A DNA stretch of 64,000 bases from Diadema antillarum (Eukaryota). Location of the stretch: NCBI RefSeq assembly GCF_040938485.1, contig NW_027271069.1:4092001-4156000 (forward strand), written 5' to 3'. Position 1 is the stretch's first letter. The number at the start of each line of letters is the position of its first letter. Below are positions 37,079 to 64,000 of the stretch, one piece after another. The notes beneath the pieces were generated by a model. That model searched no databases and was not told where the DNA came from. It saw only the letters and a program-made list of their open reading frames with translations. A program made the position numbers and the translations under genes.

Positions 37079-39676
37079 GGGCAATTCCACGGTAACTCGC
37101 GTTACAAATAATGGGTACATTTTTGGGATAATGTGCCAATATCTTTGTAATTGGTAGGATCTACAAGTTACTTTTTTCATCATGGGTTAAGTAGACATAC
37201 ACCAACTAAATGAATCCAAAAAGAAAAATAAAGGACAAACATGTTGGGATTCTTGAATCATTTAATTTCGGTAACTCGCGTTACACAAAAAGGACATGGT
37301 CAATTCTATGAAGACCTCTTTTTGGAAAGTCTCCTCATACTAGACAATCTTGATAAAAGTTTTCCTACCTTGAATTGATAGTGGGTTAGGACTCATAAAT
37401 TAACAATATCAAAGTTGAGTAACAATGACCTGGAAAAATGTAGGGAGCCTTTATGTCGGTAACTCGCGTTACGGTAACTCGGGTTACATTATGTCCACTA
37501 ACACAGGGTGACACAAATTGATGACATACAATTGTTCTGATGGCACTGAATCTTGTGTTGAATAATCTGAGAGATGCTTATTTGTGTAGATAGTAAAACG
37601 AATAAATGTTAAACAAATATTTTACTAATAAACCCAATAGAAGAGTGTGTTTAAGACTAGTAAGAGCTTCACTCCTCATAGAGACCTTGAATATGTTTGA
37701 ATATATACTAGATGATATGGGTGTATTATTACATTGTAAGTTTCAGAGTGTAAAGATGAAAAATGTTGAAAGTCTTTTTAAAACAAAACATAAAAGTATC
37801 AAACCCTATATACAAGTTTACGAAACAGCTTACAATCTTTCAAAAATTCAAATCCTATCTTTGTGAGGAGTGAAAACTAGTACATTTCTTTGCAGCTGAT
37901 TGACAAAAAGACCAGTTCGTAATTCCACTTTGTGCATGAACAAAAAAAGATCATTTGTACGAACAGGCATTTTGGTTTGTAAATTCACTGACATTTAGCA
38001 TCTGTGATGCGATGATTATTCATGCGATCCTTATCTAAATGATGCTTGCCAGCACATCCACCTGACAGCAAGAATGGTATTTTGCAATATAAACGGAAAT
38101 AAGCTGTTACTGCATTCAATACAAAACAATGAAATGGATGCCTGCTAAATTATAAACTGATGGGAGTATTCTGATCCCCTGATCTAAATGCAAGTTCATT
38201 CTTTTTTTGAACTGAAGTTCCATAAATTGTTATGTCATGCAAGCTTATACATTATGCTGCTTTGAAAACAAGTGAAGTGCCGAACCAACTGAGAAAAAAG
38301 AAAGGTCATTTGTACCAATGTGTACATGAGCTACAGTGTATACGAACTGGCTTATTACCCTACATCGACGTAAATAAGCACTGAATTGATCAGTGTTTTA
38401 GTAGTAGCCATGATAAAAAAGTCATGGGCGTACATACTCAAGCAGTATTCAAACTTACGACCTCCTGATCACCGGACCAGGTGTCATCTCCACTAGACCA
38501 CCGTGCTTTCGCCCGACAGCAAGTAGTGCTGGTTCTAATCCTTATAACATGCAGTGGGTACTGCGTAATTATTCAAATTCATGAAATTCTTCCGTTGAGA
38601 TGTTTTCATTGCAACTGATTGACAAATTGCCCTACATCAACGTTAATAAGCTCACTGAATTGATCAGTGTTTTATTAGTAGCCATGATAAAAAATCATGG
38701 GCATACATACTTGAGCAGGATTCGAACCCACAACCTCCTGATCTCCGGACAGGTGTCATCTTCAGTAAACCACCGAACAAGGATTAGAACCAACACTTCC
38801 TGTGCTTTATAGCATTCTGTAATAAAAATTCTGTAATACTGATGCAGGAAATTCAAAAGATAAATCTAATGGTCTCATTCACTGCTGGATAAATGTACAC
38901 ATGCAGTGAAAGCCAGGCTAGACTCTTCAATGTGGCATGTGATCAGTGGCCTTGATGCTAATCACAGTTTATTAGGCTACCCTCCTTTGTTTCAGTCAAG
39001 CATAGTGTGTATAGCACTGCATTTGATTGTTTTCACCACAATCTAGCTCAATTAAGTGCTAAAATTTGCTTATGTTGGGGGAAACTTGTGTTTATAGTTG
39101 GTAACTCGCGTTACATGCCGGTAACTCGCGTTACATGGTAACTCGCGTTACACTTTTCATTGACATTTTTTAATGTGATAACAGTGTTTATTCAAGTCAA
39201 CATCCTGTGTACAGTATCAGGGTGTGATGAATTTAGAAAATTATGATTCCCAACAAATTACCTCCACTGCTTCCTTCAGAATGAAAAATATTTCTTGTTT
39301 CGGTAACTCGCGTTACATGGCTCAAGGGCTGAACTTTCATGTGGTGATTAGAATTTTTTGAAGGTGGCATAAAAATTTCCTCATGGGAGACTGAAGTAGA
39401 ACCAATTTGCTTCTTTAAAATGAATTAATTGAAGTGCTAGCAGAATTTTTCTATTAAAAAAAGTTATATCAAGTTAAGCATGCATTTTAGCAATTTGGAT
39501 GACAGAAAAATTGTCTTCAACATTTGTAGCTGTTTCTCGGGAAATATTTGACCGATTGATATAATTCTTTGAGTTTCTTTAACTTCAATATATGGGTAAT
39601 ACATAATGAGTAATTCTTTTGCAATATGATAAAGTTGAAATTTTAGTGCCATGTCCACATTCCCATGGAATTGCCC
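37079..39676. mobile_element. Nested non-autonomous Sola2-type element
   Basis: TIR gggcaattcca / tggaattgccc with 4-bp TSD CCAT (37075-78, 39677-80) and a GRG terminus. Eight internal copies of ggtaactcgcgttac. Confidence 0.75.
38358..38775 (-). mobile_element. Two tandem tRNA-derived SINE copies
   Basis: The minus strand reads cggtggtctagtggagatgacacc..ggaggtcgtaagtttgaatac and ..ggaggttgtgggttcgaatcc (A/B-box-like), each followed by the same body as 3121-3235. Confidence 0.7.
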
Positions 39677-39683
39677 CCATGCA

Positions 39684-40090
39684 TACCAGACCACATTCCT
39701 AAGAGGACATCAATCGCTTTTTAGTATTAAAATTAGCAACATAAATTTCTTCATTTCTAAGTCAATTCTACGAAAATGTATGCTTTGTGTATACAATATG
39801 GCATAAAAACATTTGGCAATCCTTTCCAATCGAAAAAGTTGCCAATTTGCACCTACAACAGTGTATAGAATTATGTTGCCAATTTAAGGATTTGCAGCTT
39901 ATTTTGCCTTTAGATAATTCCTGCAAGCTATTTCAACATATTTTGCCCGTGACAAAAGGGGATAATATTTTGCAGCATTGGTTATTTCATTTGGTACATA
40001 ATTCATAATTTTTAAAGAAAAAAATAATCAAGAGTTACGCATAGATAATACATGTATATTGTACGAGAAAATTTTGAATGTGGTCTGGTA
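39684..40090. mobile_element. MITE
   Basis: 15-bp inverted ends taccagaccacattc / gaatgtggtctggta. Confidence 0.65.
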
Positions 40091-42704
40091 CTAAGCACAG
40101 AGATAGTTTTGGGAATGAAAAACAGAAAATAAAATAGAACTTGCTCTTTATATCTTAAGACATTCTCGCAAGTGTTTCTAAATAATTTTCACGCTTTGAA
40201 CAAATATTAGACTAACGATTTATTCATAGTTACACCTTGTAAACTATAGCTGATAATGTGCATGTATTCATTCGAATGCCCTCGAGACCATTCTTAAATA
40301 ACTCACATAAATTATTTAGAAATTAATGAAGAAATTTAGAGCAATTACTACTGCTCAATGACTTGGCACAATGATCATGATCAAAATTAATACTACAATT
40401 TTTTGAGAAGTATTTTTCAAAGGTTTTCAGATTTATCAAAGCTATCTTTGTGCTTTAATGGTCTAATGTAGCTGACCAATGAAATACCAACAATGAAATC
40501 AAATCAAACACCATGTATGTTCAAATGAGTTTATTATATATATATATATATATATACAGCCAATTAACATTTAAATTGCGGCATCGGTCTACCTGACATG
40601 ACACTTTTAAGCTATATATTCAAAATTTGAAGTCGATAAGTCACGCGAAATTCAAATAATACACATAAACAATACATGATTGATAGTTCTTGCTCAGACA
40701 ATTGACATGTTTATTTGTTGAAATAATAGGTTTCTGCGTATAATTTGAAAAAAAAACAAATGTTGAACATATTATTCATTATTGTAGAAGATGTTTTGGA
40801 AAATATTGTAATAATATGGTAAAAATAAGGACTTCACACATCATTACATAATTACAAATAGGGACTGTAATACAGACTAATATTTGTTTCGAGGTATGAA
40901 AAAAGGTCGTTTGAAATTTAACGGCATAATGTTTTGCGTGTATACATCAAGATTCCAAACGTGAAAGCTTCAGATTGTCTAAAATTACATTTTAATCAAC
41001 TTACGATGTTGCATAGCTATTCAAGGAACGAACCATCTTTAAGGCAGTTAATACAATTAAATTCATTTTATTTATTTTCTCAAAGTTACCTCATTTTTCC
41101 ACAAAATGACCTCTGTGACCTTTGACCTTTAACCCAATGACCCCAAAATCGAACCAAAGTATTATTCCCCCCCCCCCCCCCCCATATACCCTCATACTAA
41201 GTTTGATGTCAAACCATCACGGTTCTTGAGATATTGAAAAAAACAAAATGGGACGGACATACGCACGGATGGACGACCCGAAAACATAACGCCTGCGGCC
41301 ACTTCGTTGGCGGAGGCATAAAATATGAAACAATGCTAAATATCAAAATATTATTCACTTTCTTGTTCATGCTGTGCAGATATAGTTACGAAAGTGAAAT
41401 CGACAATTAGATTAATACATTTCGAATAATACACAGTGTTGCATCTATGCAGGACTTGTGATGACATTCTGCCAGGTATATACTCGCGTCTCTAACTATG
41501 ATACTTTTTCAAAACTTGTTGACATTTTTTTACTGTTCTTGCCTTTATTTACATTAATATGAATTCATGCTCTCCTTGCTGTCATTGCATCGCAGAATAT
41601 CCAAATGCTAATCACAATTATTAGTTATGTTGTGAAAGTAGTCTAAGAAAGTGAAATCGTGGCATTTCAAATTGCAACTTAGAAATCAATTTTCAAACAA
41701 CACATTTGTAATTTTGCAGGGCATGTCACATTCTTCCAATACTTACATTTCAAAAAATAAAGATAATGGTGTAAATTAAGCATAAATTTTCTTCACTTTG
41801 GGCGAAAAACCCCATATCTCATCAAGTTCATCGGAATATTTTGAAATACAAGAAGACATGTATTCAAATTTCCCAAGGTTTGAGGATTTGCAGATTCGAT
41901 TCAATTCGTTTTGTAATTTATTATGATACAATTGTCACACAAGCACACATTATACCAGGTATTTCTGTAATTATTGTTAGTGTCCTTATTTGCACTTAAT
42001 TTTGAATATTTCGAATTACCAATGGAAAAACAGAATTCCTAGAATACATTTTAATTTATCCAAAAATGTGTACATACTTACTGTATTTTGTAAGTACAGG
42101 CCTACGTGTTCAATCTAAGTAATGTCCAAGTCCAAGTCATTGCATTCTCCCTTCAATGTGGTGCCCTAGTTGGGCAAAACGAAGTAAGCGACAAAAGTGA
42201 TACTCCTTGTAATGACCAAAATGTGTCTCAAATTTGCAAGGGCATCAATGGAATATCACAATGTATAACCTATTATATCTCTGAGCAAGGTGAGTGTTTG
42301 TGCATTAAATTTGACTTGGAAGAAGAGCACATTAGGTGTAATATAAAAACGTCAATTACTCAAATTTGGATGGTATGTCTCTTGATTCCTTTTACCAAAG
42401 TAAGGCAGTATGAAATCTAAAGTTCCATTCCATATGCTAATAGGCTCTAATGCAGACATCAGGTTGGCTCATGTTATATACTGTATGTGTATCTCCGCCT
42501 TAAAGTTAGAAAGTCCTTTTGCAGACTTCCCTAAATACACCAAACACTGTATACAACTAATGATACTAGTATTTGGATCATGTCTGTGAAATGTCAAAGT
42601 CGCAAGATGTGTAGAATTCAAACGATGCACAAGAGTACTACAGCTGTATATGTATTTGTACTGTCGTCTGTGTTCAAGCCACAACAGTAGGCCTACAATA
42701 TGAT

Positions 42705-44468
42705 TCACTGTTCGGATGTTTGATGCATGTGTCCATCATTTTCCTCCTCCTCGGATTCATCACTCTGAGACTGTTGTACCTCTGTCGTGAGGTTTTCATA
42801 GTAGCTGTGATACATCGATGGGATAATGTTGTCCTTGCACAAACTAAGCAAATCTTGCTTCTTTTCCCTTGAGAGGGCGAGATGTTGCTTGTACAACAGA
42901 GGCAGACGCATGTCATTTCTTCGACTTGAGCCCGAGACGCGAACTTCTACGAAGTCTTCGTTGAAATCATACTTTATTTTGATGACAGAGGGGTCTGTCC
43001 TCTGTACGCGGATCTGACGAATTTTCAACCAGTTGACGGGATTGCCAGCCCTGTCCTTCTTCATGTACTTCACACAGGGTGTTGTCAACTGACGCAGATC
43101 AAGGAAGTCCTCTTTCGTCATGTGGGTAACTTCATACCGATTCCTGTTCCTTGCTGTTTGAATAACTGGTATCCACTGGTCGGGGTGATGGATTGTCACT
43201 CCCCTTTTGTTCCTTTCGATGCAGGAATGCATCGCGTCACATTCCATTTGAGTATGTCCGCTGATCAAGAATTTATGGTCAATGATGGCAACATTAGTGT
43301 GCAGAACTGCATATAGCAAAGTGCAAGCTATAATTCTGTTCCGATTTTGGCCTCCACAGCAGTCAGAAAAGAAACTTATGTGTGTGGTATCAGGATCAAG
43401 TGACTGCATGAACTTTAAGAGGCATGAGCCAATCTCACATGCTCCCCGCTTCGCTGTAGTCTCATGCCAGACAAAGCAATTTCCACATGCAGTAGCCTGG
43501 TTGTATACAGTGAAATTATACGTAGACATTTTCCGCTTGTAATAGAACGAAGATGTCTGGCCATAGGGTGTAGTCAAGACCTGTTGAAGATCAAAAGTAA
43601 AGGAGCTAAAGATTGGATCGATCTTTGCTCGTTCCTTGTCTCTTTGTTTCTCTTCTCTTGCACTTTCCTTTTCAGCAATGTGTTTCTTGTAGTTCTGCTC
43701 TTTAACTTCCCTTTCTTCCGGAGTTGAATTATTGAATGAAGCACATGTGTTACATTCATCTTTCTTCGGATGATGAAATCCCAAATTATATTGGGAATTG
43801 AAAATGTTTCTATACACTGCGAAGGAAACTGGTTTCGATACAGACGATTCGTACATTGCGTACATCTTGGAAACGCTTAAAGAAGGGTCCAGATATTTCC
43901 TTTTTGAAGACGCACGACAGTAATGTGATTCAACAACAGGAAATGAATCAATGTGTTCACATACTTTTTTAACATCTTCTTCTGAAGTTTTGTTCACTGA
44001 CGGTAACTTTCCCCTCCTGTCTTCTCGTGCAAACGGGCCTTCATACTTCTTCAATGTATACTCAATAAGCTTGGAACCAATTCCCAAAGTACTGAGAAAG
44101 AAATGTTTGCACACTCGTTCCCTTTGTGATGTGAGCGGGAGATGGTATTTGTACATGTGACGCACTCGCTTCTGACTTTTTCTCTTTTTTCTAGGTATTG
44201 CTTTGGACCGAGAAATATGGTGATGAATAAAATCTCGCTGACGGGTGTAGGAGCCCGTTTTCCAGTAATCCTCAAACAATGTTTTCCTGTCTTCATCAGA
44301 GAACTTAGAGAAGCACTTATGGGGACATTTTGTGTTACACTTCTTTCCTATCTTTCTGGCAGGGATTGTTTTATTACGTACAACATATTCCTCTCCCCGA
44401 TTACGTTTTCTTGACTGCTGTCTTTTCTTCCATTCTTCTGGATTCCGTTTTCTCTTCCTCCCACGTTT
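42705..44468 (-). CDS. Sola-like DDD transposase catalytic exon (587 aa to stop)
   Basis: Uninterrupted frame after the acceptor tatttcAG|AAA. Motifs VCKHFFLSTL, ESHYCR, PKKDECNTC, FDLQQVL (D), SDCCGGQNRN (D) and GHTQMECDAMH (D). The superfamily call comes from motif recall, not a search. Confidence 0.88.
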   Translation of the reverse strand, partial: KRGRKRKRNPEEWKKRQQSRKRNRGEEYVVRNKTIPARKIGKKCNTKCPHKCFSKFSDEDRKTLFEDYWKTGSYTRQRDFIHHHISRSKAIPRKKRKSQKRVRHMYKYHLPLTSQRERVCKHFFLSTLGIGSKLIEYTLKKYEGPFAREDRRGKLPSVNKTSEEDVKKVCEHIDSFPVVESHYCRASSKRKYLDPSLSVSKMYAMYESSVSKPVSFAVYRNIFNSQYNLGFHHPKKDECNTCASFNNSTPEEREVKEQNYKKHIAEKESAREEKQRDKERAKIDPIFSSFTFDLQQVLTTPYGQTSSFYYKRKMSTYNFTVYNQATACGNCFVWHETTAKRGACEIGSCLLKFMQSLDPDTTHISFFSDCCGGQNRNRIIACTLLYAVLHTNVAIIDHKFLISGHTQMECDAMHSCIERNKRGVTIHHPDQWIPVIQTARNRNRYEVTHMTKEDFLDLRQLTTPCVKYMKKDRAGNPVNWLKIRQIRVQRTDPSVIKIKYDFNEDFVEVRVSGSSRRNDMRLPLLYKQHLALSREKKQDLLSLCKDNIIPSMYHSYYENLTTEVQQSQSDESEEEENDGHMHQTSEQ

Positions 44469-46598
44469 CTGAAATAGAAAATAACACATGATTAACTCTT
44501 TCTTTCTCCTTGCTACAAGTAGCACACAGAATGTAAAAAGGAAATTTGTTTCATAAGTTTATTGTAAAAAAGTGGGAATATACTGAAGGTTCAAAAATAA
44601 TCCACAGAAACATGTCAATATGCAAGTGAAAAGTCAATATTAGATATGGGCCATGTTTCGTGAATACAAAGGTACTGTCCTACACTGAACCGTTTAGCGT
44701 CTAAAAACGTATGCGTTTTTCAGCGAGTTTACAGACGTAAATTAGAGGTCGAAAAAACGGCACGAGGCAGTTCTCATATTAGTTTCCCTAAAATTCTGCA
44801 ACAGTAAGTAATAATGATAATAATGATTGATGAGATTTGTAATGCGGCAAATCCACTCTGTAGAATGCTCCACGCGAAAATAGAAGAGTAAGATAGAAAG
44901 TAAATTATTAATACAAGGCATGGGTAATCAAAAGGTAGCATTAAAGAAGTGAGTTTTAAACTACTTTTAAAGGACTCTGATGAAGAGCAAAGTTTATCTA
45001 ACTAAAAGGAGATTATTCCATACAGTGGAACCAGTCTGATCCTTGTGTGCCCCAAGTTGTAGCGAATTTTGGAATTTAGAATTTAGAAACTAAATTTCTG
45101 GCGCGTTTGCAATGGACTTGATTGTAAGCTATTGCAAGTCTGTAATTGAACTACAGTACATAACCCGTGTATGAAGAGCCAATCACACTTTCCGAAATAA
45201 GCAGTTACTAAGTGTAGATAATGATTTGACAGAGATTTTTGTTGTTGAAATACTGCTCATATTATCATAATTCATGACACCTTTTATATCATATAATCAC
45301 CTCAGACTGACTGTCTTGAACCTCGTGCATGTTATCTTCATGTTGGGTATGCTGACCCTCTTGATGCTCGAGGGAGTCACGGTCACCTTGATCTTGCTCC
45401 GTCTCATTTATTTCATCCTTCGAGTGATATATGGAGACAAGAAGCCAACGTAAGAGCATTATCTGAATATCTAACTGGACTCAGTAAAACAAAAAGAAAC
45501 AGAGAATACAAAAAGGGGGTTAAATTTTTAGCAAAGTTTTCATTAGCCTTTCAAAAGCTTTGAAGGTGCCTGTGATGACATGTTAATAGTTTTAACTGAA
45601 AGCCCATGCTGTCTTCAGGGAACTATGTTATAAATTCACAAATCTATGAATTAAGAATAAAAAATATCGCTTTTATTCAAAACACGGGAAGAGGCTGCTA
45701 TCGTTCTGCCTGGCTAAATTTGAAGGAGCTTAGTCAATTGCCGTTATGCCATCAGGAGAAATAAGCAAAATGCTAGTACAAGCACAATTGATATGATTGT
45801 TTTAATAAGTTTGTGATTTAGAGGACTTATTGATAAGGAGAGCCTTAAAGACATTATGTCCCTTTTGCATTGAATTTGTGTATACAATTGGTGTAAAACA
45901 ATAAGGTATATAATGAAGAAGACACTGTTACAAAAACCTTTGTGTAGTTTTTAGACCTGTAGGGTCTTCATTTGTGAAGTACAAACTACCGTTATAATTT
46001 GAATTTATTTTTTCGAACCTCGAAAAAATATATTAGTCTCTGACACAGTCCTTTTTAATTACTTTTTACAAAATATTGAATAATGTCTTCTATAATGTAC
46101 ATTATGTTCATAATGTGTTTTGTAATTTAAATTACACACAGATAACTATTATTTCAAGAAACAAAACTTCCAAGTGTCTGAGCAAGACTATCTCTCATGC
46201 ACTGTTTACGTGCATTATTTGAATTTTACATGATTTAACTATTTCACATTTTGAATATACAACCTGCCCACCATGCTCTAGGGTTTACAGATGTTTGGAT
46301 GGTTTTCTGCTGATCTGCAAAAAGGACGATATGTCTTTAATTGTGTGATTGCTTGTTGTCACACTGATTTATATTTGAAAGAGAAGAAAAAAATCCGTAT
46401 TACCTTCTGCTGTTCAGCATCATCAAGGTTAAGTGAGACCTCCGGGTCTGGCTGCTCACGGTCGCTTCGCTCTCGCTCGAAGTCTGCATGGTTAAGTGAG
46501 ACCTCCGGATCTTGCTGCTCACGGTCGCTTCGCTCTCGCTCGAAGTCTGCATGGTTAAGTGAGACCTCTGGATCTTGCTGCTACAGTCTGTAACATCC

Positions 46599-46635
<37 letters not shown>

Positions 46636-49600
46636 ATCAAACAGAAATTTAATTCTCATAAAGAACTAAACGCAATTTCAATTATCTATAATTAGTACGA
46701 GTCACACACAATGCATCAAAACATATCTGGTTTCAATTCCGACACTATTTCCGTTTACATGTGAACGAAGTGTTGAAGATTTCTTGTTTAGTTCTTATGC
46801 TATCTGCATTAGTTTGTTCGCAAGAAGAAATCAATATTAGAAATATTAGTTCATTTCCATTGACTTAAGTTTTTGTTTGATTTTGATTACAACATAGAAA
46901 CATTAGAAATAATCATATGTTGTGGTACAGTCTCTGAAGAATTAGAATAAATATTGACTGGCAATGTTTATCACATTCAAGTTCATGTATGCATGTGTAT
47001 ATTGAATAACGAGCTCCAAGCTTACTGTAAGTCACCATGACAATATTTTTTATGAGAAGTTCATGAAAATAACAATAGTATGTCAAGGTCTGTCTACTAT
47101 GTCAAGTATGTGAAACCTCACGCGGAATTATTGGTGAACTGTTAGTATTTAGTTTCTTTTTGATATTTTTAAATTAAAGCTTAGACTTAACGTGCTAACT
47201 CTTACCTCCCAAGCTTTGCCATCGTGACAACTGCAAGGATCCTTTGCGACAAAATGTTCATAGCAGATCAGCTTCCAACATGTCATACATTCCTGGTAAA
47301 CTTCACGAGTACATCCTCTATTACAACAGAACATAGGTAGGCCCTGTTGCAGTTCATACAACGACTCAGGAAATGCTTGACTTATATCCAAGAAAGTACC
47401 TAAAATGGAAAACAAGTTAACACTCGTTGCCGAATTCCAATCACTTTAACTTTTCATTTATATTTCCATTCAATTGATCAAATGCCTCTTTTTAGTAAAA
47501 CAACTAATTACTTTGAATGATTCCAAACACATTATCAAATGTCAGTTGCCTTATTGCTCACTTGTGTTTAAAGGGGGCGTGGCTCATTTCCATTTTGGAG
47601 ATGGCTTACTTCAAGTCTTCGACAACAGATTCATTTTCATGTTTTCACACTAATGAAATTATAACCTCTTCGCCCGATATGTTAGAGAGGACTTGTATGT
47701 TGTTTTATCTTACACTTTCAAATCAATATTCCCTTATGACCATGAATTAGGTAATTACGTAGAATGTGACAGCCAACATTGTTTTAACTAACTGTTACCA
47801 ACTCATGGCTTAAGTAATACATAAAATTATATTTCACACAAATAATACCCCACCGTCGTTACCAAGAAAAATGGGGTAGCACTGGAAAATGACATATGCC
47901 ACTTATTCATATTAATTCACTTCCAAAATTTTAATAAGATTTTGTTGTTGATATTATAACCATGTGATATTTATTTAACTGTAAGAACGTATACATGAAT
48001 TCTGTATCGTGTCTGCTTTGCTATCCTGCTCCTTAATTCAGTTTCCGGACTGCATACAATAATAATTTTATTTCACTAGGGTTTGCAGACTTGACATCGA
48101 ATGGATGGTCATAAATGGAATTTAACAAAATTGTAGATGAATTACCCGAACTTGTGTCGATTTTGTTTTCTTTTAAGACACATACTGTCATACAGTCCCA
48201 TTTGTAAATGCAATAATATATAATTTCTATTCAAGCAACCTGACCAGTTAAATTCAAGCCATTTACATTTCTCTAATTCCCATAAACTCTGGCACATGCC
48301 CATAAAACGGCTGTGCGTTCTGCCAATAATAATTTCTTATCATATATATCCACTATTGATCTTTCATTCAGGCTATTCGCAAAGTATATGTTGGTTGACA
48401 ATTCTTAATCTTAATTGAGTACCTTTTGGGGTCAATTCTGGTAGAGATGACTCATCTCCACCATCCTCGTCATTAGTATCTGTTCCCACCGCTTCCTCAA
48501 TAGAGTCTCCAGAAAATTGCATGGGCTCAGTGGCCTGGTAAATGTGGTCCATTCCTTTAAAAAAATGTTACAGAAAACTCTAGCATTTAGTTCATGTTTC
48601 CTTTTCAACAAATTATGATAAAAGCAATTGGATAGGTTTCACGAAGTGCTAGCAATTTGTTATCATACGCACTGCTGCTAATTAAGGGGCTTTCACAATC
48701 GGTCATGTGATCGCTTGCGATTGCTTGCGATCCTGTACAAAGTATACTATCAAGAAATAATGGCAATAGCGATCGCACAACCAATTGTGAAAGCCCCTTT
48801 CCCCAGACAAAAGGGGTAGCCATCGAAAAATTACATGTGCCACTTATTTCCTTTCATTGTCTTTCAAAATGTGAACAATATTTTGTTGGTGATATCATAA
48901 CCATGTGATATTTATTCCAACTGTAAGAACGTATACATGAATTCTTTATCGTGTCTGCTTGGCTATCTTGCTCCTTAATTCAGTTTCCAGACTCCATACA
49001 ATAATCACATTTATATCACTAGGGTTTGCAGATTTGACATCGAATGGATCATCATAAATGGAATCTAACAAAATTGTAGATGAATTACCCGAACTTGTGT
49101 CAATTATATTTTCTTGTCAAGACATATACTGTCATACAGGCCTATTTGTAAATGAAATAGATATATAATTTCTATTCAAGCAGCATGACAAGTTGAATTC
49201 AAGCCATTTACATTTATCTAATTCCCGGAACTCTGGCATATGCTTGTGAAACGGTTGTGCTTCTGTCAATAATAATTTCTGAACATCGTATATCCACTCT
49301 TAATCTCTCATTCAGGCTATTCGCAAGTTATATGTTGGTTAACATTTCTTAATCTTAATTGAGTACCTTTTGGGGTCAATTCTGGTAGAGGTGACTTATC
49401 TCCACCATCCTTGTCATTGGCTGTTCCCACTGATTTCTCAATTGAGTCTTCAGAAAGTTGCATGGGCTCAGTGGCCTGGTTAATGTCATCCATTCCTTAA
49501 AAAAAAAATGTTACAGAAAACTCTAGCATTTAGTTCATGTTTCCTCTTAAGTATATTATAATACAAGCAATTGGATAGGTTTGACCAAGTGCTAGTCATT

Positions 49601-52600
49601 TGTTATCTATTATAATTATGTCACAGGAAGACTTTAGAATACGCAGTAGAATACTATAATGAACCTGTCCCTAAAAGTATTTCAAATAATGCAGATAAAT
49701 TCTCACGCTCATTTAAATTTATGTGTGTGCTAATTTATATTTATATAAACACACTTTGTTCAGTCAATTCTGCCAAGGACAGCTCGTCAGCATTACGGTA
49801 GTTGGTTATGTTCATTTTTATCATATTTCATTGACCAGAATGACTCAAATCCAGACCTGCACTTTGTTGTGATCAACATCCATGGACGAATTAAGCTAGG
49901 CAATTACAAATTGGTATAGTGCAATGTGTTTTAATTTTTATTTGAAATTTTCCTTTCCATACCTGGCTTAATCAATTCTGCTAGGGGCAAGTCGTCGTCG
50001 TCGTCACCACTGTCGTCTTTGTCACTACCATGTTGTCTGGGCTGGGTTATGTGGTTCTTTCCTGAAAGAGTATGCAACAAATCACTCGAAAACAATGGCA
50101 ACTTTTAGAATGTTTTCTTCCAGCAAATCATAATACAAGCAGTTCGATAGGTTTGACCAAGCTCTAGTCTTTTATCATAATTATGCTCAGGAAGACTTTA
50201 GAATACGCAGTAGAATACTATAATGAACCTGTCCCTAAAAGTATTTTAAATAATGCAGATAAATTCTCACGTTCATTTAAATTTATGTGTGTGCTAATTT
50301 ATATTTATATAAACACACTTTGTTCAGTCAATTCTGCCAAGGGCAGCTCGTCAGCATTACGGTAGTTGGTTATGTTCATTTTTATCATATTTCATTGACC
50401 AGAATGACTCAAATCCAGACCTGCACTTTGTTGTGATCAACATCCATGGAAGATTTAAGCTAGGCAATTACAAATTGGTATAGTGCAATGTGTTTTAATT
50501 TTTATTTCAAATTTTCCTTTCCATACCTGGCTTAATCAATTCTGCTAGGGGCAAGTCGTCGTCGTCGTCACCACTGTCGTCTTTGTCACTACCATGTTGT
50601 CTGGGCTGGGTTATGTGGTTCTTTCCTGAAAGAGTATGCAACAAATCACTCGAAAACAATGGCAATTTTTAGAATGTTTTCTTCCAGCAAATCATAATAC
50701 AAGCAGTTCGATAGGTTTGACCAAGCTCTAGTCCTTTATCATAATTATGCTCTGGAAGAACTTCAGAATATGCAGTCAAAATAGTATAATGAACTTGTCC
50801 CTGATGTTAATGGAATTGAATATCTGTCAATGATTTTTTTTTTTTTTTTTAAAGAGGGAAATTACAAGCACGTTACTCTCTACCACTTTACCGTAGCTGG
50901 TTTTTTTTTTCTGTATATACCTGGCTTGATCAATACTGCTAGGGGCAAGTCATCGTTGTCGTCACTGCTGTCGTCTTTGTCACCACGATGAAGCACTGAT
51001 TCATTCTTGGCATCGGTAGTAGAAAGTTCCTTAAGTGGGCCTTCGAAAAGTTGTCTGGGCTGGGCTGTGTGGTTCATTTCTGAAAGAGTATATCAGAAGA
51101 GAAGTGTGTAAATAGATATTGGCAGAGTAGCACAACGTTAACCAAGGTACACAGACCATACGTGTTCTAATTGTTCAGGAAATTATTGCACTCGGTCCTT
51201 ACACATGTTATTGTTTGAACTATACAATTCTGGTTTTAACAATCAACTTTTTTGGATTCTTATTAAATTTCTTGTTCTACCATTTCAAATCTTATCTTTA
51301 CTTAACACTGGCCGATGACTTTTGTTTTGAACATATTAATTGTAATACTCACTTTACTCTCCTTATCAAGCTGTGACAACATCTCAGTCTCAGCTAGTTG
51401 TATTTCAAATTATTACAATCACATCAACACACCGAAGGTGACTGAGATTAGTTCCATTAATATTGAATCCTTTGTTTTCGTTATCCTATCATTTTAAAGA
51501 AATACATTGGTTGATATGGGATGCCCCAATACAATCTCGCACAAATCATTACAAACCTTGTTGGGTTGAATTAGCACGAGGAGACTCCTCTTCTTTTTCG
51601 ATGTAGGAGCTGGTACTTGGGGCTTCATCATCACTGCAGTCATCATCATAAATTTCCTCAGTGTCTATAATTGTCGCCTTCCAGATGTCCTTCCTCCTTT
51701 TACCACATTTCATTGCTATTGTATTCCCTGGTAGAGGAAGTCCGATACATTTCACCTCACTCAGTTTGACGACATTGCGGGATTTATCTCTTTTCCATTC
51801 CACATACATCAAGAGGTCAGTTTCAGGTCCAGGGTGAACACCACTGTCACCACTGACGTCTTTGTCACTACCATGTTGTCTGGGCTGGGTTATGTGGTTC
51901 TTTCCTGAAAGAGTATGCAACAAATCACTCGAAAACAATGGCAACTTTTAGAATGTTTTCTTCCAGCAAATCATAATACAAGCAGTTCGATAGGTTTGAC
52001 CAAGCTCTAGTCTTTTATCATAATTATGCTCAGGAAGACTTTAGAATACGCAGTAGAATACTATAATGAACCTGTCCCTGATAATGTAGAGTTGTAAAAA
52101 TGGAATTGAATATCCGTCAATGATTTTTTTTTTTTTAAAGAGGGAAATTACAAGCACGTTACTCTCTACCACTTTACCGTAGCTGGGTTTTTTTTCTGTA
52201 TATACCTGGCTTGATCAATACTGCTAGGGGCAAGTCATCGTTGTCGTCACTGCTGTCGTCTTTGTCACCACGATGAAGCACTGATTCATTCTTGGCATCG
52301 GTAGTAGAAAGTTCCTTAAGTGGGCCTTCGAAAAGTTGTCTGGGCTGGGCTGTGTGGTTCATTTCTGAAAGAGTATATCAGAAGAGAAGTGTGTAAATAA
52401 ATATTGGCAGAGTAGCACAACGTTAACCAAGGTACACAGACCATACGTGTTCTAATTGTTCAGGAAATTATTGCACTCGGTCCTTACACATGTTATTGTT
52501 CGAACTATACAATTCTGGTTTTAACAATCAACTTTTTTGGATTCTTATTAAATTTCTTGTTCTACCATTTCAAATCTTATTTTTACTTAACACTGGCCGA

Positions 52601-54490
52601 TGACTTTTGTTTTGAACATATTAATTGTAATACTCACTTTACTCTCCTTATCAAGCTGTGACAACATCTCAGTCTCAGCTAGTTGTATTTCAAATTATGA
52701 CAATCACATCAACACACCGAAGGTGACTGAGATTAGTTCCATTAATATTGAATCCTTTGTTTTCGTTATCCTATCATTTTAAAGAAATACATTGGTTGAT
52801 ATGGGATGCCCCAATACAATCTCGCACAAATCATTACAAACCTTGTTGGGTTGAATTAGCACGAGGAGACTCCTCTTCTTTTTCGATGTAGGAGCTGGTA
52901 CTTGGGGCTTCATCATCACTGCAGTCATCATCATAAATTTCCTCAGTGTCTATAATTGTCGCCTTCCAGATGTCCTTCCTCCTTTTACCACATTTCATTT
53001 CTATTGTATTCCCTGGTAGAGGAAGTCCGATACATTTCACCTCACTCAGTTTGACGACATTGCGGGATTTATCTCTTTTCCATTCCACATACATCAAGAG
53101 GTCAGTTTCAGGTCCAGGGTGAACACCACTGTCACCACTGACGTCTTTGTCACTACCATGTTGTCTGGGCTGGGTTATGTGGTTCTTTCCTGAAAGAGTA
53201 TGCAACAAATCACTAAAAACACACAGGCAATTTTTAGAATGTTTTGTTTCAGCAAATTATAATACAAGCAGTTCGACAGGTTTGACCAAGCTCTAGTCCT
53301 TTATTTTAATCATGCTCAGGAAGACTTTAGAATATGCAGTAATAATGGTATAATGAACTTGTCCCTGATAATGTAGATTAAATGAACTTTCAATTTCACG
53401 CTCACTTATCTCTACATAAGTGCTAATTTATGTATATTACACACCCTGTTTAGTAAATTCTACCAAAGGGCAACTCATCAGCATTACGGAAGTTGGCTAT
53501 GTTTATTTATACATTAAATTTTAATTGACGAGATCGACTCCAATCCTGCAATTCGTTGTAATCAACATACCTTGAAGAATTAAGCTAGGTAATTTAAAAA
53601 TGGAATTGCATATCTGTCAATGATTTTTTTTTTTTTTTTTTTAAGAGGGAATTTACAAACACGTTACTCTCTACCACTTTACCGTAGCTGGGGTTTTTTC
53701 TGTATATACCTGGCTTAATCAATACTGCTAGGGGCAAGTCATCGTCGTCGTCACTGCTGTCGTCTTTGTCACCACGATGAAGCACTGATTCATTCTTGGC
53801 ATCGGTAGTACAAGGTTCCCTAAGTGGGCCTTCGAAAAGTTGGCTGGGCTGGGCTGTGTGGTTCATTTCTGAAAGAATATGCAATAAATCACTAAAAACA
53901 CTGGCAATATTTAGAATGTTTTCTCTCAGCAAGTTATAATACAAGCAGTTTGATAGGTTTCACCAAGCTCTAGTCCTTTATTATAATTATGCTCAGGCAG
54001 ACTTGAGAATGTGCAAGTAAAAATAGCGGGATTTATTACTTTTCCATTCAACATACATCAACAAGTCAGTTTCAGGTCCAGGGTGAACTGGATGAGTGAA
54101 ACATACAAGTATTTGAGTACTTTTAGAGTACGGTAATTGGGTTAATAGTTTCTGCCAAACTTCATTTCAGTTATTTGCTCTAAAATTAATAGATATTAAT
54201 CTGCATTCATGCCAAGGAATAAACACATAGATATTCCGTTTAACTTTAAATTACATTTAGCCACTTAGCTGCATACTAAAGTACATCACAAATGTTATAA
54301 ATATTACAAAATTATTACAAATTAAAAGACGGAGCGAATAGCATTCTTATACATCATGACATGGAAATGTCATATAACATTCCCCTCCCCTAACATTTGA
54401 AATTGAATATATCCGGCAACAAACGATGGATCAATTTTAAATGGCATTTTCACCCTTACCATCAGACTTGTTCTCCAGAGGCCCTTCCAT
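42705..54490 (-). CDS. Predicted full multi-exon transposase gene (14 coding exons, ~1304 aa)
   Basis: Exons: 54490-54460, 53868-53710, 53189-52842, 52364-52206, 51904-51557, 51079-50921, 50625-50527, 50061-49963, 49495-49367, 48554-48423, 47399-47206, 46580-46404, 45417-45301 and 44468-42705. All are GT-AG, phases match, and the total is 3915 nt with no internal stop. Confidence 0.65.
44805..45130 (-). mobile_element. Degenerate L2-type LINE 3' fragment in a transposase intron
   Basis: Remnant STVWNNL..FK..KTHFF and an (ATT/ATC)n tail at ~44805-44828. Confidence 0.55.
46420..46580 (-). repeat. 63-bp coding minisatellite (~2.6 units)
   Basis: Unit encodes QQDPEVSLNHADFERERSDRE and lies inside exon 46580-46404. 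Confidence 0.9.
47780..54090 (-). repeat. Complex tandem array of exon+intron units
   Basis: Periods of ~940 bp (D exons), 564 bp (A exons) and 1285 bp (B+C pairs, near-identical). The intron motif aagcagttcgataggtttgaccaagctctagtc is shared across units. Confidence 0.92.
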
Positions 54491-56239
54491 GCTGACGTCT
54501 ATATGATTGTACTGTGAGGCTTCCAGTAACAGTTAAATGGTGTCCTAAAATGATTTAAGAGGATACAGATACAGAAGATTTACATATATTTGATATTTTA
54601 TATGGAATTCACGAGCCCACTGTAAATCTGAAAATGGTATAGATCTAAGGGTTGTCCAAAAGGTCAAGTAAAGAGGGTAGTTTTCAGGGCAGCTGGACAT
54701 GTCATGTACGCAACGTGAATACTGAAAACGGTATGAAATTCAGTCATAATGGCTGTCCAAAAAATTGTATATTTTTGTGCTGTTACGTACTTACGGTCCA
54801 CTCCAGTGTCATTTTTTGTTTTGTTAAATGCAAATGGACAAATGGATGGGTTTACGCAATGCAAATGACGTTTTTTTAGAAAAATAGAATGGTGTTCCAC
54901 GTCTAGATAGAGATCTAGACAAACTCAAACTACAGTATATCTAAAGACTTAGCATATTATTGAGGTAGTGGCTATTCTTGCGACGAGTCATCGCTCGCAC
55001 AGCCACTGACTTAGCCACAGTCGGTATTTTGTGTATCGCGAGATAGCTAGCGATAGACGAGTCTACTTGTCTAGTCTCTAGTAGAGGCATAGATCAATCT
55101 ACTCGTGAAATAGGCCCCATCACTACAAATACATATGATATGGGACCTTACATGCTGATCGATCATAACTCTCTATATCAAATTACTGATCGCGCTCAGA
55201 ACCAACAGATGTGAATTGTACAGACTACAGCTAGGGCCTACAGGATTTATACGGCAGTGGGGCTGGTGAGCACAGTATCATAGATCTACTCGTGTTTACG
55301 ACCCCACCAAACGGCGTTTGCGCGCTGTTACCACATTGGTGGGGCTGATATCCACCGTGCATCTTTTATATAACCCTAAACCTAACCTATCAATATGTCG
55401 CGATTTCCTTAACCCTCGGCCTTGAATCAGTCTCCTACATGTATATCAGGATTTCCCCAACCCTACCTAGGCCGTGAGTCTGCCTCCTTATCGCGATCTT
55501 CCTAACCCTAGGCCGTGAATCTGTCTCTTATATCGCGATGATCGATTCAAGTAATGGGGCCGGAAACACGATTTTGCCTCTCTAACGTTAGAATCTAGAA
55601 ATATTACCTAACGCTAGATCTAGATTTTACACAAAATAATGAATGGGGCTGTGCGAGTGACGTGACAATGTAGGACTTAAGTTCGAAGCCGATATCGACC
55701 CTACCCGTGATCCGATCTCGCTCAAAATTTGGAAGACTGACTTGATGTTTGAGAACATTTCCTGCGAGTGTAACTTATTTAGATCTAGATCTAACCACTA
55801 GTGTTATGTTAGGTCTATCTAGAGTCGAGCCTCTAAATGTTAGGTCTAGAAATTTCGTGAAATTCTACTCGGGAGAACATATATTATGAGCATGGATACG
55901 AAACTAAATTAGCGCCCAAACTAACATCTAGATCTAGGGTCTATACATATCTATACATATCTAGACCTTTTCTATATTCTATAATATTAAAATTATAGAC
56001 CAGATCTAACTTTAGTCTCAGACTAGATTATAGTCTAGGTCTATCTAACTACTTACTAACTTAGATCTAGAGTTTCTAGATCGAGGTCCAGCAAATCTAA
56101 ATTGTAAGTAATCCTATGAGAATCATGCTGCTAATTCTACAAAAAAAACAACCCAACAGCAATTAAAATAGTGTTAACATAAAGTCGTCTAACTTAATTA
56201 GATCGGCATTATCGTGAAATAAGTCCCCAGTCCATTCAC

Positions 56240-56700
56240 TGCCGTTTATTTCGTCAGTGCTGTTGCCCGTTACCCTCTCCCATCGACTTTGTATACGGAG
56301 CGAGCGCACGAGCGAGGTGAGTGGTGGCTGATTTCACGATTTGGCCCTTAGATCGATCTAGATCTACTAAGGTTTATCCTTACCATTTTTCCGATTCGTC
56401 TGAACTCTGACGTTCGTCGTCGATCACGGGTAGATCTACGGAGTATGAGATAGTTGACGTCCTTCAATTCAGCAGTCCAATGCAATTAATGATATCATAT
56501 TGAAGTCAATTTTAATACCGGTAGACTCTGCGTACTAACCGTACCCATTATGCATACTGTACATGTACATGGCATATTGAGCATGCAGCCGATGCGCTAG
56601 CTCATCTCAGGCGGCGCGCGCGCGCGCGTCAGTACAGTTAGAACGACGATAACGCCTTTTCACTTGTCAGGACGCATTGCAAGCGAAATTACGAGAAAGC
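56240..56700 (-). promoter_or_regulatory. CpG-rich candidate promoter and first exon of the element's gene
   Basis: CpG-rich stretch just inside the right end, including ggcgcgcgcgcgcgcg. The exon ends gaaaaATG|GTAAGG (ATG 56386-56384). Confidence 0.45.
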
Positions 56701-57403
56701 GTTATGTGGTTGTGCATGAACGATAACCCCTTTATGCTTCTCGTACCATGCTTTAGGCAAGAGAAGCGAAAGAGCGCATTCACGTTAACCCCTTTTTGCT
56801 ACCACAAAGACGTGCATACGGCACGTTATCGCCTTTTTCTTTTGGGATTTTTTACAAAATTAGATCGAATTTGACATATCTGTTGATATGAAAATGTAGC
56901 TCATGCCATCTGCTTTCGAATGACAAATTTTTATTTTCTTGGAAAATTTGAGCCCGAAGGTGCGCTAACCCCTTTTTCCATTGAGCCGACGCAATATTTC
57001 ATCTGGCAAACTTTTTTGTTTTTCTGTGCTTTACCCTCACTTTAGTTGCAAGTTGGAAAATATATTAAAAAGCGTTGAACAAACTCAATAATAATCTAAA
57101 ATTCAGAGAGCATTTTTTACTTCTCAATACTAAACCACTAAATACATGTAAAAGAATTAACTTTAGAGTTGACTCTATACAATTAAATTTCAGAGCACAA
57201 TTTTGTTAATATACAAGTTGACTGATCGAACAATAAGCCCAATCCTGTTGAAATCATCAGTGTTGACCATGATGAATTTCCGACCGATTTGGCACATTGT
57301 TGCTACCCTCCAATGTAACACGCGAAAACAAAAGCAGTTACCCTCGGGTAAAATGAAGACGGATTAATATACGACGTTCGCATGCTCTTTTATGGTGGTA
57401 TTA

Positions 57404-63411: not shown

Positions 63412-64000
63412 CTGATGGATAAAGATTAGCGACGGTAAGTTGTGTTTGCTTGTTGTTAGAGTTGTTTTTTTTTTTGAAGCACGTGATGAAATATTCATCG
63501 TTGCTATCTAAAGTATGTAAGCACTAAAAAGGCCATGTTACTTTCATATCATGGTCATGATCATATATCATCCAGGACGACCAGGTATCTTAATATAGCT
63601 ATTCAATATTATAGCTATTCAAGTTTAAGAAGAACGTCTTTCGGTAGCGCATCACAGCAAATGAATCCAGCGCCAAACGTCGACGAGACTTACAATGCTT
63701 TTATGCCTCCATTTGCACTATTTTGGGTAATATTCTCAATGAGGAATAGACAAAATTCTCCTTGAACTGGCGTAGCATTGATATAATGATAGTATTTACA
63801 ACTTTTTTTAACATTCATAAGACAGAAGTTATCGATTTAGACTTGATGAAGTTCATGTGTTCTGGAAGACACTTTTTTTATTTGTAGATTCATATTCATC
63901 TGAATCTAATTAAAAATATCCCTATCCGTAGAGTCGCGGTCATCCACTAGACGTTAATGAATATAATCATGAATGTATAATGGATCGATAGCTGGATATA

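What the first reader, a model, noticed from the sequence alone, without database searches (positions are those of the whole stretch)
48423..53868. Tandemly amplified array of nine symmetric phase-1 exons
Seen: in transcript order B-C-B-C-B-A-A-D-D, lengths 159/348/159/348/159/99/99/129/132, all multiples of 3 and all phase 1-1. A, B and D share starts (xxNHxxQ / xMDxIxQ), ends (LP..L.(K)P(K)G) and intron sequence, so they descend from one exon+intron unit. The 1285-bp B+C duplication is near-identical and thus very recent. Any subset can be skipped without frameshift, allowing combinatorial isoforms. Ongoing exon-level amplification inside a transposase gene is something I do not recognise as described.
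Basis: partly seen in the sequence, partly recalled or inferred. Interest (0 to 1): 0.85.

Follow-up and report, generated by a model that had tools for sequence, protein, structure and literature searches.

The report
Repeated exon array inside sea-urchin transposon gene
The nine repeated, frame-preserving exon-like pieces are real and sit in the front half of the transposase gene of a large, recently mobile DNA transposon of the sea urchin Diadema antillarum, but whether they are spliced into one long protein or mixed into many isoforms has not been shown.

Summary
Observation confirmed. On the minus strand, nine AG..GT-bounded open pieces run B-C-B-C-B-A-A-D-D (159/348/159/348/159/99/99/129/132 nt), all phase 1-1, with homologous introns.

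They lie inside a 20.5-kb cut-and-paste transposon (window 36539-56991; about 31-bp TIRs, 4-bp TSDs) of Diadema antillarum. Three further insertions at unrelated loci are 99.0-99.6% identical. Two carry the same nine units (one of them has a frameshift in D1) and one has a single A unit. This rules out an assembly artefact.

Exon C encodes the family's conserved N-terminal, Tudor-like domain. A, B and D carry the family's acidic "DDD-LPLA-L" motif.

In the two intact copies, an upstream start exon, the whole array and the annotated 849-aa transposase join into one open 1,317- or 1,284-aa frame. The window's own copy is broken downstream by a 22-bp deletion.

Across copies the array exons vary five times less than their introns (p=0.01).

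A 45%-identical paralogue has its own array of five 69-nt phase 0-0 exons.

Public annotation splits the gene into 242-aa and 849-aa models. The few RNA contigs are unspliced. Full-length splicing and combinatorial isoforms therefore remain unproven.

I rate it a new variant of tandem exon duplication, of moderate interest.

The parts
36539..56991 (-). Whole DNA transposon (20,453 bp here; 17,304-17,863 bp in the other copies)
   Evidence: Homology to L001, L002 and L003 stops exactly at these two ends and their flanks are unrelated. 4-bp TSDs are ATAT, GCAT and ACAC; in the window ATTG/ATTT.
56961..56991 (-). 5' terminal inverted repeat (starts CGTCGGCTCAATGG...)
   Evidence: About 29 of 31 bases are complementary to the 3' end.
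36539..36569 (-). 3' terminal inverted repeat (ends ...CCATTGAGGCGACG)
54460..54490 (-). Start exon: ATG, 10 codons (MEGPLENKSD) plus 1 nt, GTAAG donor, phase 1
   Evidence: It is the first exon of the annotated 242-aa model.
54023..54087 (-). Truncated copy of the start of the Tudor-like exon (91% identical to C), behind its own ...CCAG acceptor. It breaks off into A/B-type intron sequence and is probably the remnant of the original exon 2.
   Evidence: The same junction is seen in runs X3 and X6 and in L005.
53710..53868 (-). Exon B1 (159 nt, phase 1-1)
52842..53189 (-). Exon C1 (348 nt, phase 1-1): A-type 5' end, Tudor-like domain and acidic tail
52206..52364 (-). Exon B2 (159 nt)
51557..51904 (-). 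Exon C2 (348 nt; one difference from C1)
50921..51079 (-). Exon B3 (159 nt; identical to B2)
50527..50625 (-). Exon A1 (99 nt)
49963..50061 (-). Exon A2 (99 nt; identical to A1). This unit is absent from copy L001.
49367..49495 (-). Exon D1 (129 nt). Its internal ATG is the annotated start of the 849-aa product. It has a 1-nt deletion in copy L003.
48423..48554 (-). Exon D2 (132 nt). Its ATG is the annotated start of the 806-aa product.
47206..47399 (-). Cys/His zinc-finger exon (194 nt, phase 1 to 0), conserved in the urchin homologues
46404..46597 (-). Exon made of 63-bp repeats. It is 216 nt in the other copies and 194 nt here because of a 22-bp deletion, which causes a frameshift.
45301..45417 (-). 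117-nt acidic linker exon
42705..44468 (-). Last exon: transposase core (DUF7869, PF25273), intact ORF
37080..39681 (.). Nested 2.6-kb insertion found in this copy only (TIR GGCAATTCCAYGG, no long ORF)

Best explanation
The array is the product of repeated tandem duplication, with occasional loss and probable gene conversion, of exon+intron units. It lies in the 5' half of the single, multi-exon gene of a large autonomous cut-and-paste DNA transposon of Diadema antillarum.

Two ancestral exons were multiplied. One encodes the N-terminal Tudor-like barrel that heads this transposase lineage in sea urchins (now C1, C2 and a truncated remnant). The next encodes an acidic linker ending in the conserved DDD-LPLA-L-KPG motif (now B x3, A x2, D x2). 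Both ancestors were phase 1-1, so every copy keeps the frame.

Shown:
- the units, their homology and the transposon boundaries;
- at least four insertions that carry the array;
- one open 1,317-aa (nine-unit) or 1,284-aa (eight-unit) frame from an upstream ATG exon through the array, the zinc finger and the linker to the DDE transposase in the intact copies;
- lower variability of the exons than of their introns.

Inferred:
- the full chain is spliced and translated;
- the multiplied N-terminal part acts as a multivalent tether that brings the transposase to chromatin or a host partner (two reader-like barrels plus seven acidic motifs).

The window's copy itself is defective, because a 22-bp deletion between the array and the transposase shifts the frame.
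For: Units and splice signals.

Transposon ends, TSDs and separate insertions.

The array is kept in L001 (8 units), L002 (9) and L003 (9).

Independent DNA: tandem D joints in runs X3 and X6; environmental metagenome scaffold L005, 98.3% identical over start exon, remnant, B1 and C1.

Annotated models use the predicted sites. The D1-D2-zinc-finger chain reproduces P0002 exactly. The 242-aa model equals start exon + B1 + C1 + B2 + 32 nt of read-through by coordinates and length.

A single open frame of 1,317 or 1,284 aa has no internal stop.

The C domain aligns to the N-termini of P0005, P0008, P0004 and P0124. Tudor domains top both fold comparisons.

Across the four copies, variable sites number 2/1563 in array exons and 26/3925 in array introns (Fisher p=0.010). 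They number 3/1802 in the transposase ORF, all synonymous.

All length differences among A, B and D exons are multiples of three.

The paralogue in L004 has five 69-nt phase 0-0 exons. These show no indel in any of the 10 pairwise comparisons, whereas their flanking introns are full of gaps.
Against: No exon-exon junction was seen in RNA. The few contigs from putative RNA runs lie in introns or run unspliced across the B2 donor, the C2 donor and the B1 acceptor.

No annotated or database product joins A/B/C to the transposase. The annotation splits the locus into two genes.

Amino-acid differences between paralogous exons are mostly non-synonymous: B1/B2 show 5 residue changes from 6 substitutions and D1/D2 show 10 from 13. 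Only the frame and the end motifs look constrained.

Every B and D exon has its own in-frame ATG, so translation could start late.

The Tudor assignment is weak (pLDDT 72.6, Foldseek E 0.05, Z 6.1).

Copies carry disabling mutations: a D1 frameshift in L003 and the 22-bp deletion in the window.
Confidence: 0.6

Rival explanations
1. The upstream units B-C-B-C-B-A-A are by-products of sloppy duplication and are not part of the working transposase. The functional protein is the annotated 849-aa (or 806-aa) product starting at the ATG inside D1 or D2. The upstream part is untranslated leader, or a separate short 242-aa product, and is drifting.
For: The annotation gives exactly these two models and no longer isoform exists in the database. 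Each B and D exon carries its own ATG. Paralogous exon changes are mostly non-synonymous. RNA contigs are unspliced. A-runs of 13-24 nt lie in the introns after each B exon.
Against: It would leave the family's conserved N-terminal domain (exon C) out of the transposase, although P0005, P0004, P0008 and P0124 all begin with it. The start exon, the array and the 849-aa frame are continuous without a stop. Exons vary five times less than introns among copies. Indels in exons are all multiples of three. The A-runs could equally explain a falsely truncated model through internal oligo-dT priming.
Confidence: 0.3
2. The array is a cassette system: alternative skipping of the symmetric exons yields many transposase isoforms with different numbers of modules.
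For: All nine exons are phase 1-1, so any subset is frame-neutral. The annotation lists isoforms (the name 'isoform X1').
Against: No junction data of any kind are available. The 806- and 849-aa products come from different copies: L003 has a frameshifted D1. They are therefore not shown to be splice isoforms of one locus. Symmetry is inherited from the ancestral exon and needs no selection for skipping.
Confidence: 0.1
3. The array is an assembly artefact, with collapsed or expanded repeats.
For: Near-identical 1.3-kb units are the kind of sequence that assemblers mishandle. No single read spanning the array could be examined.
Against: Four independently placed insertions share the same unit order. 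An environmental scaffold covers the start exon through C1. Tandem D joints appear in two other runs.
Confidence: 0.02

Closest known systems
Tandem exon duplication in animal genes (exon+intron unit arrays, symmetric exons as in exon shuffling; e.g. Dscam exon clusters, collagen and titin/nebulin repeated exons). This comparison rests on established knowledge and was not searched here beyond.
   Same: Adjacent homologous exons have homologous introns, retained AG/GT sites, identical phase at both ends, and units of graded age (100%, 96%, 90% exon identity).
   Different: The array sits inside the transposase gene of a mobile element and is copied to new loci with it. There is no evidence of mutually exclusive or cassette use. 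A full-text search for 'tandem exon duplication' plus 'transposase' found nothing relevant.
Transposase or integrase fusions to chromatin-reader domains (e.g. chromodomain integrases of chromoviruses). This comparison rests on established knowledge.
   Same: A small beta-barrel with best structural matches to Tudor domains sits at the N-terminus of a DDE enzyme, followed by an acidic motif and a zinc finger.
   Different: The domain is duplicated here by exon amplification. The domain was found only in sea-urchin members of the family.
Zator superfamily / prokaryotic ISAzo13 transposases
   Same: Language-model and structure neighbours of the transposase core include ISAzo13-family transposases. 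Zator is the eukaryotic group linked to ISAzo13 (PMC10045372).
   Different: Zator and ISAzo13 make 3-bp TSDs (PMC10045372). This element makes 4-bp TSDs. Pfam reports only DUF7869, not PF07592. The superfamily is left open.
In-exon or mini-exon repeats in the linker of homologous urchin transposases (P0004 Lytechinus 13 x 17 aa; P0008 S. purpuratus 6 x 21 aa plus a partly duplicated barrel; P0005 Diadema five 69-nt exons)
   Same: The same gene region, between the N-terminal barrel and the transposase core, is expanded in each lineage.
   Different: The repeated sequences are unrelated between lineages. Only in the two Diadema elements could the repeats be shown to be separate exons. The Lytechinus and Strongylocentrotus loci were not retrievable.

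Membership tests
Tandem exon duplication array | Adjacent exons homologous to each other | tested here: met
   B1/B2 96%, B2/B3 100%, C1/C2 99.7%, A1/A2 100%, D1/D2 90%. A, B and D can be aligned to each other.
Tandem exon duplication array | Flanking introns duplicated with the exons | tested here: met
   Intron pairs are 85-99% identical and unit periods are 564, 943 and 1285 bp.
Tandem exon duplication array | Splice signals and reading frame kept in every copy | tested here: met
   All nine pieces have AG/GT, lengths divisible by 3 and phase 1-1. A continuous ORF runs through the array in L001 and L002.
Tandem exon duplication array | Exons present in mature transcripts | tested here: inconclusive
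   Annotated models use start-B1-C1-B2 and D1-D2-zinc finger. The only RNA contigs retrievable are unspliced or intronic.
Cut-and-paste DNA transposon | Terminal inverted repeats | tested here: met
   The termini are about 31 bp long with about 29 of 31 bases complementary.
Cut-and-paste DNA transposon | Target-site duplication at independent insertions | tested here: met
   4-bp TSDs are ATAT, GCAT and ACAC. The window has ATTG/ATTT, a 3-of-4 match.
Cut-and-paste DNA transposon | Several copies in unrelated flanks, encoding a transposase | tested here: met
   Four copies are 99.0-99.6% identical. The ORF matches DUF7869 and has 464 homologues at E<=1e-10.
Zator superfamily | 3-bp TSD | tested here: not met
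   The TSD is 4 bp in three clean insertions, against 3 bp stated in PMC10045372.
Zator superfamily | Transposase related to ISAzo13 | tested here: inconclusive
   Atlas neighbours include ISAzo13 clusters, but TM is below 0.5 and the comparison used another protein's model. PF07592 was not hit.
Tudor domain (royal family barrel) | Five-stranded SH3-like barrel fold | tested here: inconclusive
   The AF2 model has pLDDT 72.6 and four strands were called. Top hits are the ARID4A/B and KDM4 Tudor domains, with E 0.05, TM about 0.5 and Z 6.1-4.1. Pfam gives no hit.
Tudor domain (royal family barrel) | Aromatic cage binding methyl-lysine or methyl-arginine | not tested
   The conserved W and other aromatic residues in alignment A1 were not mapped onto a cage.
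Alternatively spliced cassette or mutually exclusive exon cluster | Transcripts with different subsets of the units | not testable with these tools
   The single reads call found no junctions. The 806- and 849-aa products come from different copies.

The most novel reading that the evidence does not exclude
In this sea-urchin transposon family, the region between the N-terminal reader-like domain and the DDE core is a hot spot for amplification of symmetric exon+intron units. Selection keeps the units in frame, so that the number of tethering modules (Tudor-like barrels and acidic LPLA motifs) can be changed quickly, and possibly mixed by exon skipping, as the element adapts its targeting or escapes host control. 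The two independent arrays in paralogous Diadema elements would then be instances of one evolutionary mechanism, not accidents.
Probability: 0.2. Interest if true: 0.75.

Novelty: new variant of a known kind. Interest (0 to 1): 0.55.

Why it matters
Transposase genes are usually thought of as compact and conservative. This one is a 12-kb, 14-exon gene in a 17-kb element that was mobile recently. Its N-terminal, presumably targeting, part has been built up by exon-unit duplication, and a paralogue has done the same with different exons.

If the long product is made, it would show how a mobile element can change the valency of its chromatin- or host-binding modules through ordinary unequal recombination. 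It would also offer natural variants (8 versus 9 units, one versus two barrels) for testing how such modules affect integration.

It is also a practical warning. Annotation pipelines split such genes, and near-identical exon units defeat short-read evidence.

Tried and rejected
- Tandem Repeats Finder found nothing in the array because the periods exceed 500 bp.
- Pfam gave no hit for the B, C or D peptides.
- I first took the 200-bp inverted repeat 40615-40814 / 46063-46259 for the element's TIRs, which would have put the array outside the transposon. I rejected this because the true ends, defined by four insertions, are 36539 and 56991, and the repeat lies inside an annotated intron and downstream of the ORF.
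- phmmer of exon C against 1.84 billion representatives gave only itself and P0124. P0122 and P0123 are low-complexity repeat proteins and spurious.
- A search for longer isoforms using the D1-D2-zinc-finger region found only P0001 and P0002.
- A search with the C1 ORF found only P0121, an unspliced ORF on an environmental metagenome scaffold.
- The loci of P0004 (Lytechinus) and P0008 (S. purpuratus) are not on record, so I could not tell whether their repeats are separate exons.
- Literature searches for DUF7869, for tandem exon duplication in transposases and for Diadema antillarum transposons found nothing relevant.
- I did not use depth ratios in run X3 (65 versus 290-660) as copy numbers, because contig word depth sums collapsed units and copies.
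Full report
**1. The observation**

Reading the minus strand of 47800-54500 and testing each proposed acceptor and donor confirms nine open pieces:

| Exon | Coordinates | Length (nt) |
|---|---|---|
| B1 | 53710-53868 | 159 |
| C1 | 52842-53189 | 348 |
| B2 | 52206-52364 | 159 |
| C2 | 51557-51904 | 348 |
| B3 | 50921-51079 | 159 |
| A1 | 50527-50625 | 99 |
| A2 | 49963-50061 | 99 |
| D1 | 49367-49495 | 129 |
| D2 | 48423-48554 | 132 |

- Each piece is preceded by AG with a pyrimidine tract and followed by GT. Each is open in the frame in which two nucleotides complete a codon at the start and one is left over at the end.
- Direct-repeat and self-BLAST analyses show that the introns are duplicated with the exons, with periods of 564 bp (A units), about 943 bp (D units) and 1285 bp (B+C units).
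- Exon and intron identities of paralogous units fall into age classes:

| Pair | Exon identity | Intron identity |
|---|---|---|
| B2/B3, C1/C2 | 100%, 99.7% | 99.2% |
| A1/A2 | 100% | 95% |
| B1/B2 | 96% | 92% |
| D1/D2 | 90% | 87% |

- A, B and D exons align from end to end apart from in-frame indels of 60, about 30 and 3 nt.
- C is a chimera. Its acceptor, upstream intron and first ~57 nt are A-type (99.6% identical to A2's) and the rest is a different coding body.
- A truncated copy of the beginning of that body, behind its own acceptor, lies at 54023-54087 and breaks off into A/B-type intron sequence. It looks like the stump of the original second exon.

**2. What surrounds it**

The 606-aa ORF at 42705-44525 on the same strand is a DUF7869 protein. 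Its language-model and structural neighbours include ISAzo13-type DDE transposases.

A database search identified the organism and the annotation. Two Diadema antillarum products, P0001 (806 aa) and P0002 (849 aa), are 100% identical to the ORF. Their sequences begin at the ATG inside D2 or D1. They then continue through D2, a Cys/His zinc-finger exon, an exon made of 63-bp repeats and a short acidic exon into the transposase exon.

Fetching the loci that encode them gave three further copies from assembly GCA_040938485.1.
- Homology between these loci, and to the window, stops at exactly the same two points, and the flanks are unrelated.
- The ends are imperfect ~31-bp inverted repeats, flanked by 4-bp duplications ATAT, GCAT and ACAC. 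In the window the duplication is ATTG/ATTT.
- The array is therefore internal to a cut-and-paste transposon of 17.3-17.9 kb. It is 20.45 kb in the window (36539-56991) because of a nested 2.6-kb insertion.
- The copies are 99.0-99.6% identical, so the element moved recently.

**3. The array in the other copies**

- L002 and L003 have the same nine units. L001 has eight, with a single A.
- L003 has a 1-nt deletion in D1, which explains why its annotated product starts in D2.
- An environmental metagenome scaffold (L005) covers the start exon, the stump, B1 and C1 at 98.3% identity.
- Contigs of two other runs contain D-to-D tandem joints and the stump junction.
- The array is therefore not an assembly artefact.
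- The A-unit introns are only 95% alike while the copies differ by under 1%. The single-A state of L001 is thus better explained as a loss by unequal recombination than as the ancestral state.
- The two C-to-B units differ at 5, 2, 6 and 1 positions in the window, L001, L002 and L003. No difference is shared by all four, and the pattern does not fit a single tree. This points to gene conversion between units or recombination between copies.
- The B+C duplication is thus older than the last transposition burst, and its near-identity is not a simple clock.

**4. Is it coding?**

(a) Exon C aligns to the N-termini of the paralogous Diadema product P0005, the Lytechinus and Strongylocentrotus products P0004 and P0008, and an 86-aa protein, P0124. 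Those homologues start with this domain, follow it with an acidic DDD-(I/L)PL-x-x-L motif (the tail of A/B/D here), and then have the same zinc finger, species-specific repeats and the transposase.

(b) An AlphaFold model of the domain (pLDDT 72.6) has Tudor domains of ARID4A/B and KDM4 as its best matches in two comparisons. The scores are modest: E 0.05, TM about 0.5, Z 6.1-4.1. I treat "Tudor-like" as a lead only.

(c) An ATG exon at 54460-54490 with a phase-1 GTAAG donor is the first exon of a second annotated gene of 242 residues. By coordinates and length this gene is start exon + B1 + C1 + B2 + 32 nt of read-through into the next intron.

(d) In L002 and L001, the start exon, all array exons and the exact exon chain of P0002 form one frame of 1,317 and 1,284 codons without an internal stop.

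(e) Variable sites across the four copies:

| Region | Variable sites | Note |
|---|---|---|
| Array exons | 2/1563 | |
| Array introns | 26/3925 | Fisher p=0.010 versus array exons |
| Transposase ORF | 3/1802 | all synonymous |
| Rest of element | 46/9939 | |

(f) All exon length differences are multiples of three.

Against strong protein-level constraint, the substitutions between paralogous exons are mostly non-synonymous. This fits a disordered acidic linker in which frame and end motifs matter more than sequence, but it also fits drift.

**5. RNA**

- The RNA runs gave nine short contigs.
- All lie in introns or run unspliced across the B2 donor, the C2 donor or the B1 acceptor. None shows an exon-exon joint.
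- Depth is low, and the tool warns that DNA can be present in such libraries.
- This neither confirms nor refutes splicing at the predicted sites.
- No product longer than 849 aa containing D1/D2 exists in the protein collection.
- Runs of 13-24 A lie in the introns after each B exon. They could cause internal oligo-dT priming and thereby the truncated 242-aa model. This is inference.

**6. The window's own copy**

- Relative to the three other copies, it lacks 22 bp in the 63-bp-repeat exon, which is 194 nt here instead of 216 nt.
- Read through the exon chain, its frame is open for 619 codons (start exon, array, zinc finger) and then shifts, stopping at codon 687.
- This copy cannot make an array-transposase fusion, although its 606-aa transposase ORF is intact.

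**7. A second, independent array**

- The paralogous Diadema element (P0005, 45% identical transposase) lies in an intron of a BK-channel gene (L004).
- Its annotated chain was reproduced exactly: a 282-nt first exon (barrel plus acidic motif), five 69-nt exons, a 63-nt exon and the transposase exon, all phase 0-0.
- The five mini-exons sit in homologous units of 430-950 bp.
- They are 82.5% identical, with no indel in any of the 10 pairwise comparisons. Their flanking 120-nt introns, at similar substitution identity, carry hundreds of gap columns.
- Amplification of symmetric exon units in this part of the gene is therefore recurrent, and the frame is kept over considerable divergence.
- An unchecked first-stage note in this genome (s1-208823) describes triplicated 20-aa mini-exons in another transposase linker. 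I did not test it.

**8. Interpretation**

Most likely (0.6): the array is a translated, amplified N-terminal module of the transposase, produced by unequal recombination of two phase 1-1 exons and carried along by transposition. Its function would be tethering or targeting through two reader-like barrels and seven acidic motifs. The structure is shown. Splicing of the full chain and the function are inferred.

Main rival (0.3): only the 849-aa product matters and the upstream units are leader sequence or debris.

An assembly artefact is essentially excluded.

**9. Comparison and novelty**

- Tandem exon duplication and the preference for symmetric exons are textbook phenomena, and reader-domain fusions to integrases are also known.
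- What is unusual here is their combination inside a recently mobile DNA transposon, repeated in a paralogue.
- Searches of the paper library found no description of this.
- The superfamily is unresolved. The transposase core has ISAzo13-like neighbours, as Zator does (PMC10045372), but the TSD is 4 bp, not 3.
- I classify the finding as a new variant of a known kind, with moderate interest.

Noticed in passing
window 37080-39681: A 2.6-kb insertion is present only in the window's copy of the transposon. It has terminal inverted repeats GGCAATTCCAYGG, a CCCATG-like duplication at both ends and no ORF of 90 aa or more. It looks like a nested non-autonomous DNA transposon.
   Followed up: partly
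window 40615-40814 and 46063-46259: A 200-bp inverted repeat (77% complementary) lies inside the element. One arm is downstream of the transposase ORF and the other is in the intron after the 63-bp-repeat exon. It is not the element's TIR. It may be two copies of a small element or an internal structural feature.
   Followed up: partly
window 46404-46597: This coding exon is built from a 63-bp minisatellite (2.5 copies here, about 3 in the other copies). The window's copy has a 22-bp deletion at about 46583 that shifts the frame between the array and the transposase.
   Followed up: yes
window 50834-50850, 52125-52137, 53625-53642 (T-runs on + strand): Each intron that follows a B exon carries a run of 13-24 A in the transcript sense. 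These are candidate sites for internal oligo-dT priming or premature polyadenylation. They could explain why the annotated 242-aa model ends by reading through the B2 donor.
   Followed up: no
window 51492-51584, 53369-53463, 53858-53970: A size-fractionated RNA library labelled echinoderm metagenome (X2) gave short adapter-flanked contigs on both strands, mostly in introns of the array. They may be small RNAs against the element.
   Followed up: no
L004:8001-15366: A paralogous Diadema transposon gene (P0005, 807 aa) lies inside an intron of a BK-channel (Slo-like) gene. It has its own array of five 69-nt phase 0-0 exons in units of 430-950 bp.
   Followed up: yes
L005 (TARA metagenome scaffold, 2153 bp): This environmental DNA scaffold is 98.3% identical to window 52549-54722 (start exon, stump, B1, C1). 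It is probably sea-urchin DNA in a marine sample.
   Followed up: partly
L003:9055-9182: Copy L003 has a 1-nt deletion in exon D1, so its annotated product (806 aa) starts in D2. The 806- and 849-aa products are therefore encoded by different copies and are not shown to be splice isoforms.
   Followed up: yes
window 63159-63425 minus strand: A 89-codon open stretch rich in acidic residues lies outside the transposon. It is possibly an exon of a host gene.
   Followed up: no
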